IMG/VR virus record: IMGVR_UViG_3300037805_000644
Coordinates: 1 to 64,000 of that record
Reading direction: 5' to 3' (one strand)
Length of the DNA stretch: 64,000 bases
Made by a program: the position numbers and the translations under genes. The first letter of the stretch is position 1; each line of letters begins with the position of its first letter. Positions 22,872 to 30,500 of this stretch are shown here, piece by piece. The notes below the pieces were generated by a model that worked only from the letters and a program-made list of their open reading frames with translations, made no database searches and was not told the origin of the DNA.

Positions 22872-23753
22872 TTAACTACTATGTGGTGGGCTACCGTTAC
22901 CTCTTTTATCTGGCCCCATGAACATTTCGCAGAATTCAGGGATAGCGATCCTCATCCTTTTTCGGGCAATCTCCAGGTATTTCGGGGAGATATCCACACC
23001 TAAGAAGTCTCTGAGGTTATTGCCGGCAGCAACGCCTGTGGTGCCACTGCCACAGAAAGGGTCAAGAACCAGATCACCCTCTTTGGTGAACAGCTTAACG
23101 AAAAAATCAGGAAGGGCCACTGGGAATGCGGCTGGGTGTCCTAGATTTCGGGTCTCCGTCGGGAGGTGCAGGACATTGCTCGGGAAAACCATTTTCCGGT
23201 CTTTCCAAACCCCCGTGTTTTTCGTGTACCCTGAACCCGTCCCAGACATCACCTGACCAACGCTCTCCCCTTGTGTCCAATCTCCCACCGGAACACGGAC
23301 ATTATCCTGGTACATCAAGAACTTGCGGTTCTTGTTAAACTGTAGGATCCGTTCCCAAGAATCCCTGAAACGATTAGGCCATTTACCCGGTGTGGTGTTC
23401 TTTTTGTGCCAGATGAATTCCTCAGTCCAAATCCACCCCTGAGAGCGCATCGCCTGGATCAAATCCAGAACGTAGGTATGCCGCTCCCCGCGATGCACAT
23501 GCTCCTTGATGTTCACAAGCAGGGTGCCCGAGTCCTCCAACACCCTGTAAAGTTCCAAGGAGACATCCCTCCACCACTCCACGTAATCGTTTGCAGGGAT
23601 GCCCCCGTAAGTGGCTTTCCGCTGAGTTGCATAGGGAGGTGAGGTGAAGATAAGCTGGACACTCCCACTCTCAAGCCCTCCCAACGCCAGGGGCACAGCC
23701 CCTTCAATCAAATCCCACTCAACCACGCTTGTCTCCTTCGGAGTTAGCCGCAT
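22872..23753 (-). CDS. Complete beta-class N4/N6 DNA methyltransferase
   Basis: FTSPPY catalytic motif, HPAAFP, VLDPFCGSGTT SAM-binding motif. Confidence 0.92.
   Translation of the reverse strand: MRLTPKETSVVEWDLIEGAVPLALGGLESGSVQLIFTSPPYATQRKATYGGIPANDYVEWWRDVSLELYRVLEDSGTLLVNIKEHVHRGERHTYVLDLIQAMRSQGWIWTEEFIWHKKNTTPGKWPNRFRDSWERILQFNKNRKFLMYQDNVRVPVGDWTQGESVGQVMSGTGSGYTKNTGVWKDRKMVFPSNVLHLPTETRNLGHPAAFPVALPDFFVKLFTKEGDLVLDPFCGSGTTGVAAGNNLRDFLGVDISPKYLEIARKRMRIAIPEFCEMFMGPDKRGNGSPPHSS
22876..22901 (-). promoter_or_regulatory. Recurrent promoter-like motif
   Basis: GGTAAC-N14-TAGTAG. Confidence 0.7.
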
Positions 23754-24362
23754 GTACAGGTTTCCGGGCCGTCAGAAAGGGCTCCCAGGAGGGGCGCACG
23801 GCTGTGCCGTAACCATCCCAGAACTGGGCCTCCTTTGTGGTGGGTTCAGTGATGTACTGCACCCCTGCCGAACCGGCATCCCCACTGCCAACCAGGGTGT
23901 CGAACCCCCGACCACCCTTGCGCTTAGAGTTCGGGCGACTGGAGGGGTTGACCCCCACCGGCGTCCCCTCGAAACCCAACCGCTTGTCGATGGATTTGCT
24001 GATGTTCAGGTTTTTAGGGAAGCCTGTGCCGTACCCCCAGGCTTCGAGGCTGAGGTCCGTGAACCCCGCCTCCTCAAGGACCTGTGCCAGCCGGTGATAG
24101 GTGCGGGCGGCCGAGAACACCTTGACCACCCCGCCAGGCTTGAGCTTCTGGTAAATGAGGGTCCAGAGATCTGCATCGAAAGCGATCCCCGAGCGGTCCC
24201 ATTTCTTGCCCATGAATCCAATCTCAGGTATTATTACTCGTAGGGGGGATCGGTGATGACAGCGACGATTGAGTCGTCGTCCAGCTCCAGCAGGCGCACT
24301 TGGCAAGCACCCAACCACAGCAGGAATGTCAGATCCCCCCTACGAGCCTTATTTTCCAGCAT
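23719..24362 (-). CDS. Methyltransferase fragment A (catalytic half), interrupted by an 11-nt gap after DPPYE
   Basis: ..DDDSIVAVITDPPYE [TAATAATACCT] (E)IGFMGKKWD..LKPGG..RTYHRL..YGTGFPK..WDGYGTAVRPSWEP..ARKP; 209 aa if the gap is bypassed; no FxGxG. Confidence 0.75.
24237..24346. repeat. Perfect 15-bp inverted repeat of the DPPYE codons
   Basis: CTCGTAGGGGGGATC (24237-24251) / GATCCCCCCTACGAG (24332-24346). Confidence 0.9.
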
Positions 24363-24374
24363 CGAGGGTTCCTC

Positions 24375-25175
24375 ATGAAAGTTCAACGCACATGCCCAAT
24401 ATGCGGCAAGGTCTACAAAGCAGACAGTACCCGGCTCAGGCATGGGAGGCAGACCACCTGCTCTCGTGCTTGCTCTTACTCGCTCCGGGGGGGGAAACGA
24501 GCTACCTCCACTGAGATCACCTGCACCACCTGCGGGAGTTCTTTCACACGCCCCCCCAGCCAGATGAAATCACGCCATGGGGGATCTTTCTGTTCAACTG
24601 AGTGCCATTACAAAGGTCGGGGTCTCGGCCACGTCCAGAGAATCGTGGAGGACGGATATGACCTCACGCCCGAGGGGCGTGCCTCTCTTTCCGTTCGCCG
24701 CAGGGAGGCCAACTTCAAACGCAAAGCCGAAGGCAGATACGGCCACACCGAGGAAACCCGAAAGAAACTCTCAGCCTCAACCGCTAAGGCCATTGCTGAG
24801 GGCCGGATCCCACGAATCTCCAAGTTTGAGCGGGAGGTGGGGGTGGTGCTGAGGAGCTTGGGGGTCAAAGCCCAACCCCAGCACGGCATCCGGGATGCTC
24901 AAGGGAGATTCCGTGCGGTGCTGGATTTCTGGCTGCCCGAGCTGGGGGTAGGTGTGGAAGCCAACGGCACTTTCTGGCACGCCGACCCTCGGGTTTTCCC
25001 CCAAGGCCCGGAGCACGCCAGCCAAAAGCGAACCGCAGAGAGGTATGCCCGGAAAATGGCTCTGTTAAATCTGCGGGGGGTTCCCGTGATCGAGGTGTGG
25101 GAGAAAGATTTCAGGGAGGACCCTAAGGGGGCCGTTCAGGATGCCCTTCGAGGTCTCAACGCCCCTGGTGATTGA
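24375..25175 (+). mobile_element. Vsr/DUF559-like homing endonuclease with Zn-ribbon repeats and NUMOD3
   Basis: CPICG..CSRAC, CTTCG..FCSTEC, HTEETRKKLS, SKFE..LDF..VEANGTFWH..IEVWE. Confidence 0.85.
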
Positions 25176-27608: not shown

Positions 27609-28406
27609 TTATTCACGGTAAGGCTCAAAGCCCTCCTGGGCAACCCAGAAATCCTTGGAGGTGGGGGAAGCAATCAGCTCAGGAGACACGAGGCCATACC
27701 CGTCATCTCCCCAGGTCACCCCCCAGGAGTTCTCGATGAGGAACATGCCGTCCACATAGCCCACGATAACGACGGCATGGAGACCTACCCGGTCCTCTCG
27801 GGGGACCGGCTTGAGGGGGACCAGGGGACCTTTGCTCTTGTAGTGCTGGTACCAGTTGTCCCCCACATTGGTGCCGAACACCACAGGGTTTCCCGCCCGC
27901 AAGCAGTTGATCACCTCGGTGACCCGAGCGGCACCCGTGGACCGGATTTTGAAATAGCTCTCGATCTTGTGGAGGTAAGCAACCCGCAAAGACATGAAGC
28001 TCGGGGGGGTGTTCACCTTGTCGAGGTCGAACGGCCAGTTGGCCTCAGGGGGCACACCGAACCGACGCAGCACATTGAAGGCGTGGCTGACATACGTCCC
28101 CTCATCGTTGTGGGTCTCGGGGGGGCTCATCAGCTCTCGGGCCAGGTAATAAACGGCCAGGCGACTCAGATCCACATGGGCTGCCAGGCCGTGCTTCTGG
28201 ATGCGCTTGATCTCCAACGCCTTGATGCAGGCGTTGGCTACACAAGAGTTGGACCACCTCTGGTCATGGCGGGGCCCCGAGAAAGGGCGGAGGTCAGCAT
28301 CGCCGGAATCCTCATAAACCATTTGTGCCTTGAGGCTGTCCTCATACGACCAATGGCTAGGGTTGTCCGGTTCCTCCCGGAACCCCTTCAACGTGATCGG
28401 GTTCAT
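27609..28406 (-). CDS. Papain-like (C1) cysteine peptidase
   Basis: DQ..SNSCVANA, HAVVIVGY, ENSWG..WGDDGYG. Confidence 0.9.
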   Translation of the reverse strand: MNPITLKGFREEPDNPSHWSYEDSLKAQMVYEDSGDADLRPFSGPRHDQRWSNSCVANACIKALEIKRIQKHGLAAHVDLSRLAVYYLARELMSPPETHNDEGTYVSHAFNVLRRFGVPPEANWPFDLDKVNTPPSFMSLRVAYLHKIESYFKIRSTGAARVTEVINCLRAGNPVVFGTNVGDNWYQHYKSKGPLVPLKPVPREDRVGLHAVVIVGYVDGMFLIENSWGVTWGDDGYGLVSPELIASPTSKDFWVAQEGFEPYRE

Positions 28407-28656
28407 CGTGGATCCTCACCTGTTTGAAATAACCAGAAGCCCCGGGGAGTACCCTCTCCAGCTCGGGGATAGGGCAACCCTTGGCGCAGAACGACTTGGA
28501 GCATCCTGCCTTATGGACCAGGATCACATTGGCACCAAACCCACCAGAGGGCAAGCGGCTGCCATCAATGTTGACGGCACCTGTCCCGTGGGTTTCAACA
28601 TTGGCGACGATACTGGGCTCGCCGAGGGGCTTGCGGAGCATGTGGATCACGTACAT
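28357..28656 (-). CDS. Methyltransferase fragment B (central region)
   Basis: LRKPL..SIVANV..HGTGAVNIDGSR..ANVIL.H..C..GCPI..L..GASGYF. Confidence 0.75.
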   Translation of the reverse strand: MYVIHMLRKPLGEPSIVANVETHGTGAVNIDGSRLPSGGFGANVILVHKAGCSKSFCAKGCPIPELERVLPGASGYFKQVRIHDEPDHVEGVPGGTGQP

Positions 28657-30500
28657 CAGTCTTCCCCAAACATGGCGTCAAACAGGTCGGGCTCTTCGGG
28701 ATCAGGCTCGCTTTCGTGCCTCTGATCAGTTGCCAGATCGAGCTTGCGGTACCCGGGGAGCCTTTGGTCCCAGTGCTCAATGCGGTTGGTGGAGATCTCC
28801 ACGTACTCCGGGGTCATGTCGATGCCCGTGAAATCGTGGCCTGTCCTCAAGCAGGCAACTCCTGTGCTGCCTGACCCCATGAAAGGGTCCACCACCCGGC
28901 CCCTTGGCACATCCCGCAGCAGGGTCTGCATGAGCCTCCAGGGTTTTACTGTGTTGTGACTCATCCCTACTGCCGTCTGAAACGTAGGGCAGTCCCGTAC
29001 CGTGAGGTTCCACACATCACCTTTGTAAGGGGTCGGGGTGATCCCTTGAACATAGGAGAGCCGGTATTCCACGCTTTCATGTTCCAGGATGGTGGGTCGG
29101 GTAGGTTTACGGCGCTCCTGCTCCCGGTCCAAGGCGTAAAAGCGCATTTGGTACGACGGCAGGGTCTCCTTGAACTTCCGACTCCCAATTTTGCCCGGCT
29201 GCGCCCCATAGCGGTGCAGGTTGCCCTTAGACCCCAGGGCCTCCCCCAGCAAACGCATCTGCGAGGCGAGATCTGGAGAGACGGTTTTAGCCTGGCGGTA
29301 TGTCCTCACCTTGCCGCCATCTCCTGCCATGTACCCCTCGAACACTGCTTGCCAAGTGGACCGCTGCCGTTGCCAGATCGTGGGGGGTAGCCGCTTGTTC
29401 GACGCCCCACACGGGGACCATTCCCGGAACTGCCCCCCGACCTCCGGGTCGAACCCGATGACCTGGACTGCCTTGGTTCCCTTTTTCGGGTACTCCCCCA
29501 GATTGAATCCCCGACCCTCAAAAAACCGACGAAGCCGGTTGATGTAGTCCGTCTCGTCCTGGTGGAGAGTGAACGAGGGGTACACGTTGGAACCGTGTCC
29601 CGCACGCTGGAGCACACCCTCTGCCAGCCACAACCCGAATACCCACCACCACTCATCCGGCCGGTCGTCCTTGATCCCTATGTCCACCAGCAGAGGGGTC
29701 ATCGTGTAATCCCCTCTGCGGATCGCTTGAGCCTCCACCCACCCCACGTTACCGCCGGTGATGTTCTTGCCTTTCCGGGTGGGCCTCCAGATGAGGAACG
29801 GGTGGTTGTCTGATGCCAGGGTGGTGTAGTTCGTCCCCTGCACTGCGATCTCGTACAGGTGGTCGCTAGTGTACGGGTGGTGGCTGATGTCCTCAATGGC
29901 GTGGAAACGCCCATCCGACCCCAACACCCGGTGGGCCAGGGTGACCTCAGAGATGGGCCGGTACCCTTGTTCTGTCATCACGAAAGCATCAGGGTGCAGG
30001 CAAGGGTGGTGATTCTTGACCCCCTGGGCCGTTCGGGAAGCCCCTGCCCGAGGGCTCTTGAGGCCGTCCGACCCTTCCTTACGCCCAGTGGCAGCGGCGC
30101 CAGTCTGCTCAGGTAGACCCTGGCACCCTGCCTCACGCTCAGCTCGGCTGACCTTGGCCATGTAGTGGAAAGGATCGGAGGCGTCATCGACCACCAGGAA
30201 CGTATCCCGGACCTGGAAGCCCCCGTCCTCCAGGTTGACCGCCCCCTTGTGCCCAATGGGGTTGTCCTCAGGGGCAACCACCATGAGGTGCGCCCCCGGC
30301 TTGAGGACCCTCAGCAGTTGGACGGTCATGGCCTTGTCAGGGGTCCCCACGACGAGGAGACCTGTTAGGGCTCCATCGGCGATGGAGCCCCAGTCCACCT
30401 TGGACATGTTGGGGATGAACACTGCCTCAAGATAGGGCTCGGGAGGGCTCAGGAACGTCCGTAGATAGTCGGACAAGCCCTTGGGGATAGGACGGCTCAT
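28656..30500 (-). CDS. Methyltransferase fragment C (SAM-binding half) with intein
   Basis: Degenerate LRVLKPGAHL..EDGGFQVRD; FHYMAKVSRAEREAG..NHHP|TVKP..VVDPFMGSGSTG; no DPPY. Confidence 0.85.
   Translation of the reverse strand: MSRPIPKGLSDYLRTFLSPPEPYLEAVFIPNMSKVDWGSIADGALTGLLVVGTPDKAMTVQLLRVLKPGAHLMVVAPEDNPIGHKGAVNLEDGGFQVRDTFLVVDDASDPFHYMAKVSRAEREAGCQGLPEQTGAAATGRKEGSDGLKSPRAGASRTAQGVKNHHPCLHPDAFVMTEQGYRPISEVTLAHRVLGSDGRFHAIEDISHHPYTSDHLYEIAVQGTNYTTLASDNHPFLIWRPTRKGKNITGGNVGWVEAQAIRRGDYTMTPLLVDIGIKDDRPDEWWWVFGLWLAEGVLQRAGHGSNVYPSFTLHQDETDYINRLRRFFEGRGFNLGEYPKKGTKAVQVIGFDPEVGGQFREWSPCGASNKRLPPTIWQRQRSTWQAVFEGYMAGDGGKVRTYRQAKTVSPDLASQMRLLGEALGSKGNLHRYGAQPGKIGSRKFKETLPSYQMRFYALDREQERRKPTRPTILEHESVEYRLSYVQGITPTPYKGDVWNLTVRDCPTFQTAVGMSHNTVKPWRLMQTLLRDVPRGRVVDPFMGSGSTGVACLRTGHDFTGIDMTPEYVEISTNRIEHWDQRLPGYRKLDLATDQRHESEPDPEEPDLFDAMFGED
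28953..30002 (-). mobile_element. Intein (350 aa) with LAGLIDADG endonuclease
   Basis: CLHPDAFV...MSHN|T; FGLWLAEG and FEGYMAGDG. Confidence 0.92.

What the first reader, a model, noticed from the sequence alone, without database searches (positions are those of the whole stretch)
24237..24346. Perfect 15-bp hairpin ending exactly on the take-off codon
Seen: an antisense copy of the DPPYE codons lies 80 nt upstream in the same mRNA, within the N-terminal KARRGDL codons. The stem extends by TGACA/TGTCA past a 5-nt bulge. Inference: it could close fully only after the ribosome has slid about 14 nt, to the landing GAG, so it might drive and position the hop like the 5' stem-loop of gene 60. Alternatively it could control initiation of the two divergent genes or be a scar of endonuclease insertion.
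Basis: partly seen in the sequence, partly recalled or inferred. Interest (0 to 1): 0.78.

Follow-up and report, generated by a model that had tools for sequence, protein, structure and literature searches.

The report
Hairpin partner of a ribosome hop

Summary
Bases 24237-24251 and 24332-24346 form a perfect 15-bp inverted repeat, extended by G·U and by UGACA/UGUCA across a 5-nt bulge. The mRNA fold is -64 kcal/mol (z -6.2).

The 3' arm is the DPPYE codons of a methylase gene. They are followed by UAA UAA, an 11-nt gap and a second GAG. Ungapped relatives read DPPYE-IGFMGKKWD straight through.

I found 20 more distinct gapped alleles at this codon in uncultured phages:
- Hops span 8-25 nt and fall in all three frames.
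- A stop codon always follows take-off.
- The landing codon matches take-off (GGN>GGN; here GAG>GAG).
- The gaps hold 1 G in 138 nt.

Every allele with enough upstream sequence has a stem whose 3' arm is the DPPY and take-off codons. Arm pairing averages -22.5 kcal/mol, against -10.2 in 139 ungapped relatives. The 5' arms sit at non-homologous positions and show compensatory changes.

The hairpin is therefore most likely a selected 5' stimulator of a gene-60-like hop. In this clade it is linked to a divergent homing endonuclease. Stem length does not track hop length, so closure does not set the landing site.

No protein data exist, so the mechanism is inferred.

The parts
24332..24346 (-). 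5' arm of the hairpin (CUCGUAGGGGGGAUC). It lies in codons A-R-R-G-D-L of an N-terminal extension that ungapped homologues lack.
   Evidence: Alignment A2 and the comparison with L086 show an 18-nt in-frame insert here.
24327..24331 (-). 5' strand (UGACA) of the inner 5-bp helix
24262..24326 (-). Enclosed domain with two further predicted helices. The clade consensus also has two inner helices.
24257..24261 (-). 3' strand (UGUCA) of the inner helix
24252..24256 (-). 5-nt bulge UCACC
24237..24251 (-). 3' arm, the codons D-P-P-Y-E (catalytic motif IV of the methylase). Its last codon, GAG 24239-24237, is the proposed take-off codon.
24226..24236 (-). Untranslated coding gap UAA UAA UACCU. It contains no G.
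24223..24225 (-). Proposed landing codon GAG. Decoding resumes at AUU GGA UUC AUG (I-G-F-M).
24237..24362 (-). N-terminal ORF piece of the half-methylase (MLENK...DPPYE, 42 codons)
23719..24225 (-). C-terminal piece (EIGFMGKKWD ... ARKPVHAANSEGDKRG, then stop), in the +2 frame relative to the N piece
24375..25175 (+). Divergent homing-endonuclease-like gene (HNH/Vsr-like). Its start lies 12 nt from the methylase start. Homologues occupy the same position in four other gapped loci.
24206..24234 (+). Sigma-70-like promoter match pointing at the endonuclease gene. The -35 (TTGCCC) comes from the M-G-K codons and the -10 (TATTAT) from the gap.

Best explanation
The hairpin is the 5' stimulatory stem-loop of a programmed translational bypass (a hop) in a phage half-methylase gene. 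The proposed sequence of events is as follows. The ribosome reads MLENK...DPPYE and stops with GAG in the P site and UAA in the A site. At that moment the 15-nt 3' arm is the stretch held inside the ribosome from the P site to the mRNA exit. The inner helix and the free 5' arm wait just outside the exit. The peptidyl-tRNA(Glu) lets go of its codon. Base pairs then form at the exit one after another and pull the mRNA through. The anticodon scans a G-free gap and re-pairs at the first matching codon, GAG, 14 nt on. Decoding resumes at IGFMGKKWD, which gives the uninterrupted motif DPPYE-IGFMGKKWD seen in ungapped relatives. [quoted passage not shown] Inferred: that one polypeptide is made, and that the stem acts as a forward driver rather than by some other effect on the paused ribosome. 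In this clade the gap, the arm-bearing N-terminal extension and a divergent homing endonuclease gene form one linked unit. By analogy with T4 mobA/gene 60, the gap may protect the gene from its own endonuclease.
For: Structure and rarity. Homologues read DPPYE(L/I)GFMGKKWD without the 14 extra nt: 76 of 80 IMG/VR loci plus mycobacteriophage methylases. The closest relative, L086, has identical DPPYE codons. Their properties: hops of 8, 10, 12, 13, 14, 15, 18, 24 and 25 nt in frames 0, +1 and +2; a stop directly after take-off in all; landing GGN for take-off GGN in 16; and NGY in 4. This window alone has GAG>GAG, which is take-off/landing covariation. L204 and L207 share the same N piece but have gaps of 21 and 22 nt, and both land before L-E-F-M. 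The two codons after the landing codon vary synonymously. The inner gaps hold 1 G in 138 nt against 34% G in the flanks, P about 1e-23. Hairpin: in the 19 distinct alleles with 120 nt upstream plus L199 (54 nt), the MFE stem has its 3' arm on the DPPY and take-off codons and ends -2 to +3 nt from the end of the take-off codon. Arm-versus-upstream duplex energy averages -22.5 (n = 19) against -10.2 (n = 139 gapless), Mann-Whitney p = 1.5e-12. The 5' arms lie at three or more non-homologous places: the N-terminal extension, the SVG codons and the HTVD codons. In the 10-sequence clade alignment the closing helix is 95.8% paired, with 4 compensatory pairs. One of these couples a synonymous Pro change (CCC/CCA) to an R-to-M change in the extension. 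The covariation score was reached by 0 of 500 shuffles, and 91% of cells pair against 33-58% in slid controls. Literature: pairing of exiting mRNA is proposed as the forward driver in gene 60 (10.1101/2024.12.09.627546), and the gene 60 bypass plus MobA form a mobile cassette (10.1101/2022.08.31.505936).
Against: There is no protein, ribosome-profiling or RNA-structure data for any allele. No RNA run could be listed, and the read data add only one identical contig. All gapped alleles are from uncultured phages, and many are related, so the statistics overstate independence. Stem length does not scale with hop length, so 'closing exactly at landing' is not a family rule. Several gene 60 signals are absent: there is no stem-loop starting at the take-off codon within the gap and no SD-like element before landing. 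Four lineages have a first-position mismatch at the landing codon. L087 shows no stem, but only 50 nt of its upstream sequence are available. The product is a methylase half without the AdoMet-binding domain, and its own function is unknown.
Confidence: 0.6

Rival explanations
1. The two pieces are made as separate polypeptides. Ribosomes terminate at UAA and re-initiate at the conserved AUG of F-M-G-K 20 nt downstream. The hairpin helps this coupling, or simply folds the spent upstream mRNA.
For: Gene callers split the gene this way. An AUG follows every gap because F-M-G is a conserved motif. Split enzymes that reassemble are known next to homing endonucleases (10.1101/2022.08.31.505936).
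Against: This model does not predict a matched take-off and landing codon exactly two codons before F-M. It does not predict the GAG/GAG versus GGN/GGN covariation, the synonymous-only variation of the two codons before F-M, or the near absence of G from the gaps. No SD-like sequence precedes the AUG in most alleles. The split would separate a 32-43-aa peptide carrying the catalytic DPPY from the rest of the fold.
Confidence: 0.14
2. The inverted repeat serves the divergent endonuclease gene. A promoter whose -10 lies in the gap starts a plus-strand transcript at about 24241. The repeat then forms a 5'-terminal stem-loop or leader that stabilises or attenuates the endonuclease mRNA.
For: There is a promoter-like site, TTGCCC-17-TATTAT, at 24206-24234 on the plus strand. 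Similar antisense -10 hexamers lie in the gaps of other endonuclease-linked alleles and would explain the shared ATACC motif. The plus strand also folds well (z = -3.6) and is followed by UUAUUUU.
Against: Nine local-hairpin alleles with no predicted antisense promoter in the gap (L168, the one whose neighbours were read, has no adjacent endonuclease) still have a stem on the same codons. The stem is stronger on the methylase strand because of G·U pairs (-64 against -57 kcal/mol). The U-tract is not conserved in relatives. A transcript starting at about 24241 would lack the first 4-5 nt of the arm. This could be an added role in this clade rather than the primary one.
Confidence: 0.12
3. The locus is a decaying pseudogene, and both the gap and the repeat are neutral by-products of endonuclease-induced break repair (a scar).
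For: An endonuclease gene lies next door. The genome carries other selfish elements, including an intein. The methylase lacks its AdoMet domain. The arm ends exactly at the insertion boundary, as a template-switch product copied up to a break might.
Against: Both pieces remain open and conserved across alleles that are only about 45-55% identical. Half-methylases of this length form a conserved family next to a partner methylase. Compensatory changes keep the stem. Gaps are G-free and keep matched codons. The insert is not templated by the flank of the other arm (read directly).
Confidence: 0.05
4. The stem is an RNase III (or other nuclease) processing site that separates the upstream and downstream mRNA.
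For: The stem is a 16 + 5 bp duplex, long enough for RNase III in this window.
Against: In relatives the stems are 12-14 bp local hairpins, short for RNase III. Processing explains none of the codon-level regularities around the gap.
Confidence: 0.04

Closest known systems
Phage T4 gene 60 translational bypass with its 5' / extended stem-loops, and the MobA-bypass mobile cassette
   Same: [quoted passage not shown] A stop codon sits in the A site at take-off. An untranslated gap lies early in the ORF. [quoted passage not shown] An HNH-type homing endonuclease gene is adjacent, and the gap lies in the most conserved motif of the host gene (10.1101/2024.12.09.627546; 10.1101/2022.08.31.505936).
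   Different: The host gene is a beta-class DNA methylase, not topoisomerase, and there is no sequence homology. The gap is 5-22 nt (11 here), not 47-50. The 5' stem is far stronger and contains the take-off codon itself in its 3' arm. There is no stem-loop starting at the take-off codon inside the gap and no SD-like element before landing. Gaps are G-free. A nascent-peptide signal is unknown.
Byp elements of Magnusiomyces capitatus mitochondria
   Same: Many short inserts in coding genes are skipped between matched or near-matched codons, with imperfect first-position matches tolerated (PMC5009743).
   Different: Those are 27-55-nt GC-rich inserts in mitochondrial genes, read by mitochondrial ribosomes, with an unused codon in the A site and little dependence on context. 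The present case is in bacterial viruses, always at one site of one gene family, with a stop codon and a conserved upstream stem.
Candidate short bypass in Streptomyces phage terminase genes (UUA-dependent), and low-level stop-hopping in E. coli
   Same: Short-distance hops over a slowly decoded or stop codon between matched codons (PMC5009743, PMC10732093; stop-hopping from my own knowledge of Weiss et al. 1987).
   Different: Those cases lack a conserved, covarying 5' hairpin and an endonuclease link. E. coli stop-hopping is an inefficient error, not a conserved gene feature.
Endonuclease-split phage genes with added tails (MobE in nrdA; MobA in topoisomerase)
   Same: An N-terminal extension is created next to a divergent or inserted endonuclease gene. 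The Cluster P mycobacteriophage methylase is split in this way.
   Different: In this window the gene is not split into two stable subunits by the endonuclease ORF. The endonuclease lies upstream, and the interruption is an 11-nt gap.

Membership tests
Programmed translational bypassing (gene 60 class, by mechanism) | [quoted passage not shown] | tested here: met
   GAG 24239-24237 and GAG 24225-24223. In relatives, GGN>GGN in 16 alleles and NGY in 4.
Programmed translational bypassing (gene 60 class, by mechanism) | Stop or very slow codon in the A site at take-off | tested here: met
   UAA UAA follows the take-off codon here. TAA, TAG or TGA does so in all 21 alleles.
Programmed translational bypassing (gene 60 class, by mechanism) | Gap is skipped, not decoded (frame-independent) | tested here: met
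   Comparative evidence only. Hops of 8-25 nt occur in all three frames. L204 and L207 differ by 1 nt in the gap yet give the same flanking protein. Gaps hold 1 G in 138 nt.
Programmed translational bypassing (gene 60 class, by mechanism) | One polypeptide made from the two ORFs | not testable with these tools
   No proteomic or RNA data. No RNA run could be listed.
Programmed translational bypassing (gene 60 class, by mechanism) | [quoted passage not shown] | tested here: met
Programmed translational bypassing (gene 60 class, by mechanism) | Take-off stem-loop beginning at the take-off codon and folding in the A site | tested here: not met
   The 11-nt gap is left unpaired in the MFE and centroid structures and has no self-complementarity.
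Programmed translational bypassing (gene 60 class, by mechanism) | SD-like element a few nt 5' of the landing codon | tested here: not met
   The gaps contain no G, so no GAG or GGAG is possible.
Programmed translational bypassing (gene 60 class, by mechanism) | Nascent-peptide signal | not tested
   The upstream peptide is the conserved methylase motif and cannot be separated from protein constraint.
T4 gene 60 / MobA cassette (by homology) | Insertion in the topoisomerase II large-subunit gene with a homologous 50-nt insert | tested here: not met
   The host gene is an N6/N4 DNA methylase. No Rfam match.
T4 gene 60 / MobA cassette (by homology) | Adjacent HNH-family homing endonuclease moving with the gap | tested here: inconclusive
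   An HNH/Vsr-like gene (phrog_559) is conserved in the same divergent position in L212, L213, L203 and L186, with remnants in L205, L206 and L086. Homing and self-immunity were not tested. Local-hairpin alleles show no homologue of the window endonuclease, and L168 has no adjacent endonuclease gene.
-1 or +1 programmed ribosomal frameshift | Slippery site allowing re-pairing in the overlapping frame, and a fixed frame change | tested here: not met
   A slip on U CCC CCC would delete the catalytic Tyr, and the site is not conserved. Relatives need 0, +1 or +2 frame changes.
Intrinsic transcription terminator | Short GC-rich hairpin followed by a U-tract | tested here: not met
   No terminator call at the site on the gene strand. 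The loop is 80 nt and the tail is UAAUAAUACC.

The most novel reading that the evidence does not exclude
A second, evolutionarily independent and widespread family of programmed translational bypassing exists in phage DNA methylase genes. Its dominant signal is a hairpin whose 3' arm is the last 13-16 nt read before take-off, followed by a stop codon, a G-free gap of 5-22 nt and a matched landing codon. In one clade it forms a mobile unit with a divergent homing endonuclease whose promoter -10 may lie in the gap. A sister design sits at the HPT|VKP motif of the methylase of culturable Cluster P mycobacteriophages.
Probability: 0.55. Interest if true: 0.9.

Novelty: new variant of a known kind. 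Interest (0 to 1): 0.82.

Why it matters
Efficient natural ribosome hopping is known from very few systems: T4 gene 60 and its homologues, and the inserts of one yeast lineage's mitochondria. What pushes the ribosome forward in gene 60 is still argued from mutants of a single sequence.

This family would supply some twenty natural variants with hops of 8 to 25 nt. They have two hairpin architectures and clear covariation. The signal set is much simpler than in gene 60: stem, stop codon, G-free gap and matched codon. That makes the 'pairing of exiting mRNA drives bypass' idea directly testable.

The family also repeats the endonuclease-plus-gap logic of mobA/gene 60 in an unrelated gene. That suggests a general way for selfish endonucleases to mark and protect their host gene.

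Finally, it warns annotators that tiny ORFs ending in ...DPPYG next to 'truncated' methylases are probably one gene.

Tried and rejected
- **Assembly error:** rejected. Three assemblies are identical over 6.5 kb, and a Logan contig at depth 12 is identical.
- **Simple -1 slip on the C6 run, or transcriptional slippage:** rejected. The product would lose the catalytic Tyr, and relatives need all three frames.
- **Stop-codon reassignment:** rejected. All three stop codons occur, most gaps are out of frame, and this window has UAA UAA.
- **Repeated or mobile short element:** rejected. The 15-mer and the 11-nt gap are unique in the genome.
- **Insert templated by the hairpin flank (quasi-palindrome correction):** rejected. 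The complement of the 5' flank does not match the insert.
- **Known RNA family:** none found.
- **Phage tRNA that might assist:** none in the genome.
- **Pfam on the separate pieces:** no hit. PHROGs did place both pieces in methylase families.
- **More gapped alleles from the metagenome scan:** the top 80 loci contained none.
- **Representative search:** it yielded only artefacts, either N-gapped scaffolds (L170, L171) or a 1-nt G-run shift (L169).
- **Cultured or genome examples at the DPPY site:** none in 185,579 species genomes. The three tested alleles gave no blastn match in deposited phages.
- **RNA-seq evidence:** no run could be listed.
- **Literature:** no paper describing a methylase bypass was found in the held library.

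Full report
**What is there**

The window is the first 64 kb of a 222,939-bp, 61% G+C single-contig genome. It came from a seawater metagenome and is evidently a large phage.

On the minus strand, an ORF runs from 24362 to 24237 (MLENKARRGDLTFLLWLGACQVRLLELDDDSIVAVITDPPYE). It ends in TAA TAA. Eleven non-coding bases later, a second GAG (24225-24223) opens the frame that reads EIGFMGKKWD... down to 23719. Both pieces match phage DNA methylase families.

Mycobacteriophage methylases and 76 of 80 IMG/VR homologues read DPPYELGFMGKKWD without interruption. The closest relative is L086, from a phage that shares gene order with this one. It has the identical 15 nt for DPPYE, followed directly by ATC GGC TTC ATG. 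So the window carries 14 extra bases, and a GAG-to-GAG hop would restore the family motif exactly.

**The hairpin**

- The two 15-nt arms (24237-24251 and 24332-24346) are perfect complements.
- The stem gains a G·U pair and a 5-bp helix across a 5-nt bulge.
- The mRNA folds to -64.1 kcal/mol (z -6.2).
- The 15-mer is unique in the genome.
- Perfect inverted repeats of this size are about 140-fold over chance, and only seven exist in the genome.
- The 5' arm lies in an 18-nt in-frame insert (K-A-R-R-G-D) that L086 and all other homologues lack.

**The gap is not unique**

Three searches turned up 20 more distinct gapped alleles in uncultured phage contigs:
- proteins that start at MGKKWD;
- 23-73-aa proteins that end in DPPYG;
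- a degenerate DNA pattern.

All 20 are interrupted directly after the codon that follows DPPY, and in all of them that codon is followed by a stop. The distance from take-off to landing is 8, 10, 12, 13, 14, 15, 18, 24 or 25 nt, covering all three frames.

Two codons before the conserved F-M there is a Gly codon matching the Gly take-off codon in 16 alleles. In four alleles it is NGY. This window alone has Glu at that position, and it alone has GAG at both take-off and landing.

L204 and L207 encode the same N piece but have gaps of 21 and 22 nt. Both land in front of L-E-F-M.

The two codons after the landing codon vary synonymously (CTT, CTG, CTC, TTG; GAG, GAA), so they are translated.

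Between the stop and the landing codon there is 1 G in 138 nt, against 34% G in the flanks. That is what a scanning Gly or Glu peptidyl-tRNA would select for.

A fixed frameshift, stop-codon reassignment, separate initiation and neutral decay all fail to explain this set. A hop explains all of it.

**The hairpin travels with the gap**

For each locus I computed the best duplex between the 15 nt of DPPY plus take-off and the 120 nt upstream.
- Gapped alleles (n = 19 distinct) average -22.5 kcal/mol, range -32.2 to -16.5.
- Gapless homologues (n = 139 distinct) average -10.2 kcal/mol, range -18.2 to -2.4.
- Mann-Whitney p = 1.5e-12. Relatedness inflates this figure.

In the MFE folds, the stem's last paired base lies -2 to +3 nt from the end of the take-off codon in every allele with enough upstream sequence.

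The 5' arm is recruited from different places:
- an N-terminal extension about 80 nt upstream (this window, L181, L185, L186, L203, L204, L205, L207, L208, L212);
- the S-V-G codons (L168, L180, L193, L197, L199);
- the H-T-V-D codons (L172, L191, L195);
- other positions (L174, L178).

That is convergence on one 3' arm.

In the 10-sequence alignment of the long-range clade, RNAalifold recovers the closing helix. It is 95.8% paired with four compensatory pairs. In one of them a synonymous Pro change (CCC to CCA) is matched by GGG to UGG, which turns Arg into Met in the extension. So the RNA is conserved, not the peptide. Overall 91% of cells pair against 33-58% in slid controls, and no shuffle of 500 reaches the covariation score.

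L087 shows no stem, but its contig begins only 50 nt upstream.

**Mechanism**

It is established knowledge that a ribosome covers roughly 12-15 nt 5' of the P-site codon. With GAG in the P site, the 15-nt 3' arm is therefore the covered stretch. The bulge, the inner helix and the free 5' arm sit just outside the exit.

After codon-anticodon release, pairing at the exit can pull the mRNA through. This is the role now proposed for the gene 60 5' and extended stem-loops (10.1101/2024.12.09.627546). This step is inference.

Stems of 13-19 paired nt accompany hops of 8-25 nt. So closure does not measure the distance. The matched codon after a G-free gap most likely does.

**Endonuclease link**

The divergent gene at 24375-25175 is HNH/Vsr-like. 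Homologues (49-53% identical) occupy the same position, 8-12 nt from the methylase start, in L212, L213, L203 and L186. Remnants lie in L205 and L206.

L086 keeps only a frameshifted stub of about 35 codons. It has neither the gap nor the arm.

The local-hairpin alleles show no homologue of this endonuclease, and L168, the one whose neighbouring genes were read, has none next to it. So the stem belongs with the gap rather than with the endonuclease.

The parallel with the MobA-bypass cassette, where the insert blocks self-cleavage (10.1101/2022.08.31.505936), is close but untested here.

The gap also supplies a -10-like hexamer for a plus-strand promoter aimed at the endonuclease gene. The same holds in other endonuclease-linked alleles. 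This may be a second role of the gap and of the plus-strand hairpin.

**Limits**

- There is no protein or RNA evidence.
- The read data add one identical contig and nothing across the gap in the other samples.
- All gapped alleles at this site are metagenomic.
- The methylase half lacks the AdoMet domain. It probably works with a partner methylase encoded nearby. This was not examined further.
- No paper in the held library describes a bypass in a methylase.

Noticed in passing
window 28656-30500 (-): A 614-aa DNA methylase carries an intein inserted in the HP|TVKP motif. The relative L086 has the intein-less 265-aa allele (L086 478-1258 aligns to window 30386-30000 plus 28949-28562).
   Followed up: partly
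window 28357-28656 (-); L086 4378-4833: A 99-aa ORF encodes the methylase middle segment (RKPLGEPSIVANVETHGTGAVNID...). In full-length relatives this segment follows ARKP. In L086 a copy of it overlaps the end of the half-methylase. These phages seem to carry the methylase in several pieces.
   Followed up: partly
L223 (Mycobacterium phage Techage MK919480) 1396-2559; also Fishburne, Donovan, KilKor: A 27%-identical homologue of the window endonuclease lies on the opposite strand inside the Cluster P methylase gene. It is unannotated, or annotated on the wrong strand, and it splits the gene. The C-terminal part starts with a 29-codon ORF ending AHPT-TAA. Then 7 nt (TAATGCC) precede VKPLALMRW in the +1 frame, and a 10-bp hairpin ends 3 nt before the end of the ACC codon. 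This looks like the same design at a second methylase motif, in culturable phages.
   Followed up: partly
window 24206-24234 (+); gaps of L087, L181, L186, L203, L212: The conserved ATACC motif of the 12-18-nt gaps reads as a -10 hexamer on the antisense strand, often with an upstream TG. It lies 16-19 nt from a TTGCCC made by the M-G-K codons and points at the divergent endonuclease gene. No such site occurs in alleles without that gene.
   Followed up: partly
L086 3800-3990 (-): A frameshifted remnant of the first 35 or so codons of the endonuclease gene (EVQYECPIRG... / ...IRHGRQT...) lies next to an ungapped, hairpin-less half-methylase. This looks like endonuclease loss, or an earlier stage of the cassette.
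   Followed up: partly
window 22872-23753 (-): A complete SPPY-type N6/N4 methylase (293 aa, Pfam 1e-44) overlaps the end of the half-methylase by 35 nt. Half-methylases ending just after ...EPxxxARKP form a conserved family that usually lies beside a methylase with the AdoMet domain (L168, L208, L212).
   Followed up: partly
L169 (ENA k141_4071238) about 380-410: A half-methylase with a long in-frame loop after DPPYD is interrupted by a single-base shift in a GGGG run just before GFMGMQWD. This is either an assembly error or a -1 slip site, and it differs from the stop-plus-gap design.
   Followed up: no
whole genome G000: ARAGORN finds no tRNA or tmRNA gene in the 223-kb genome.
   Followed up: yes
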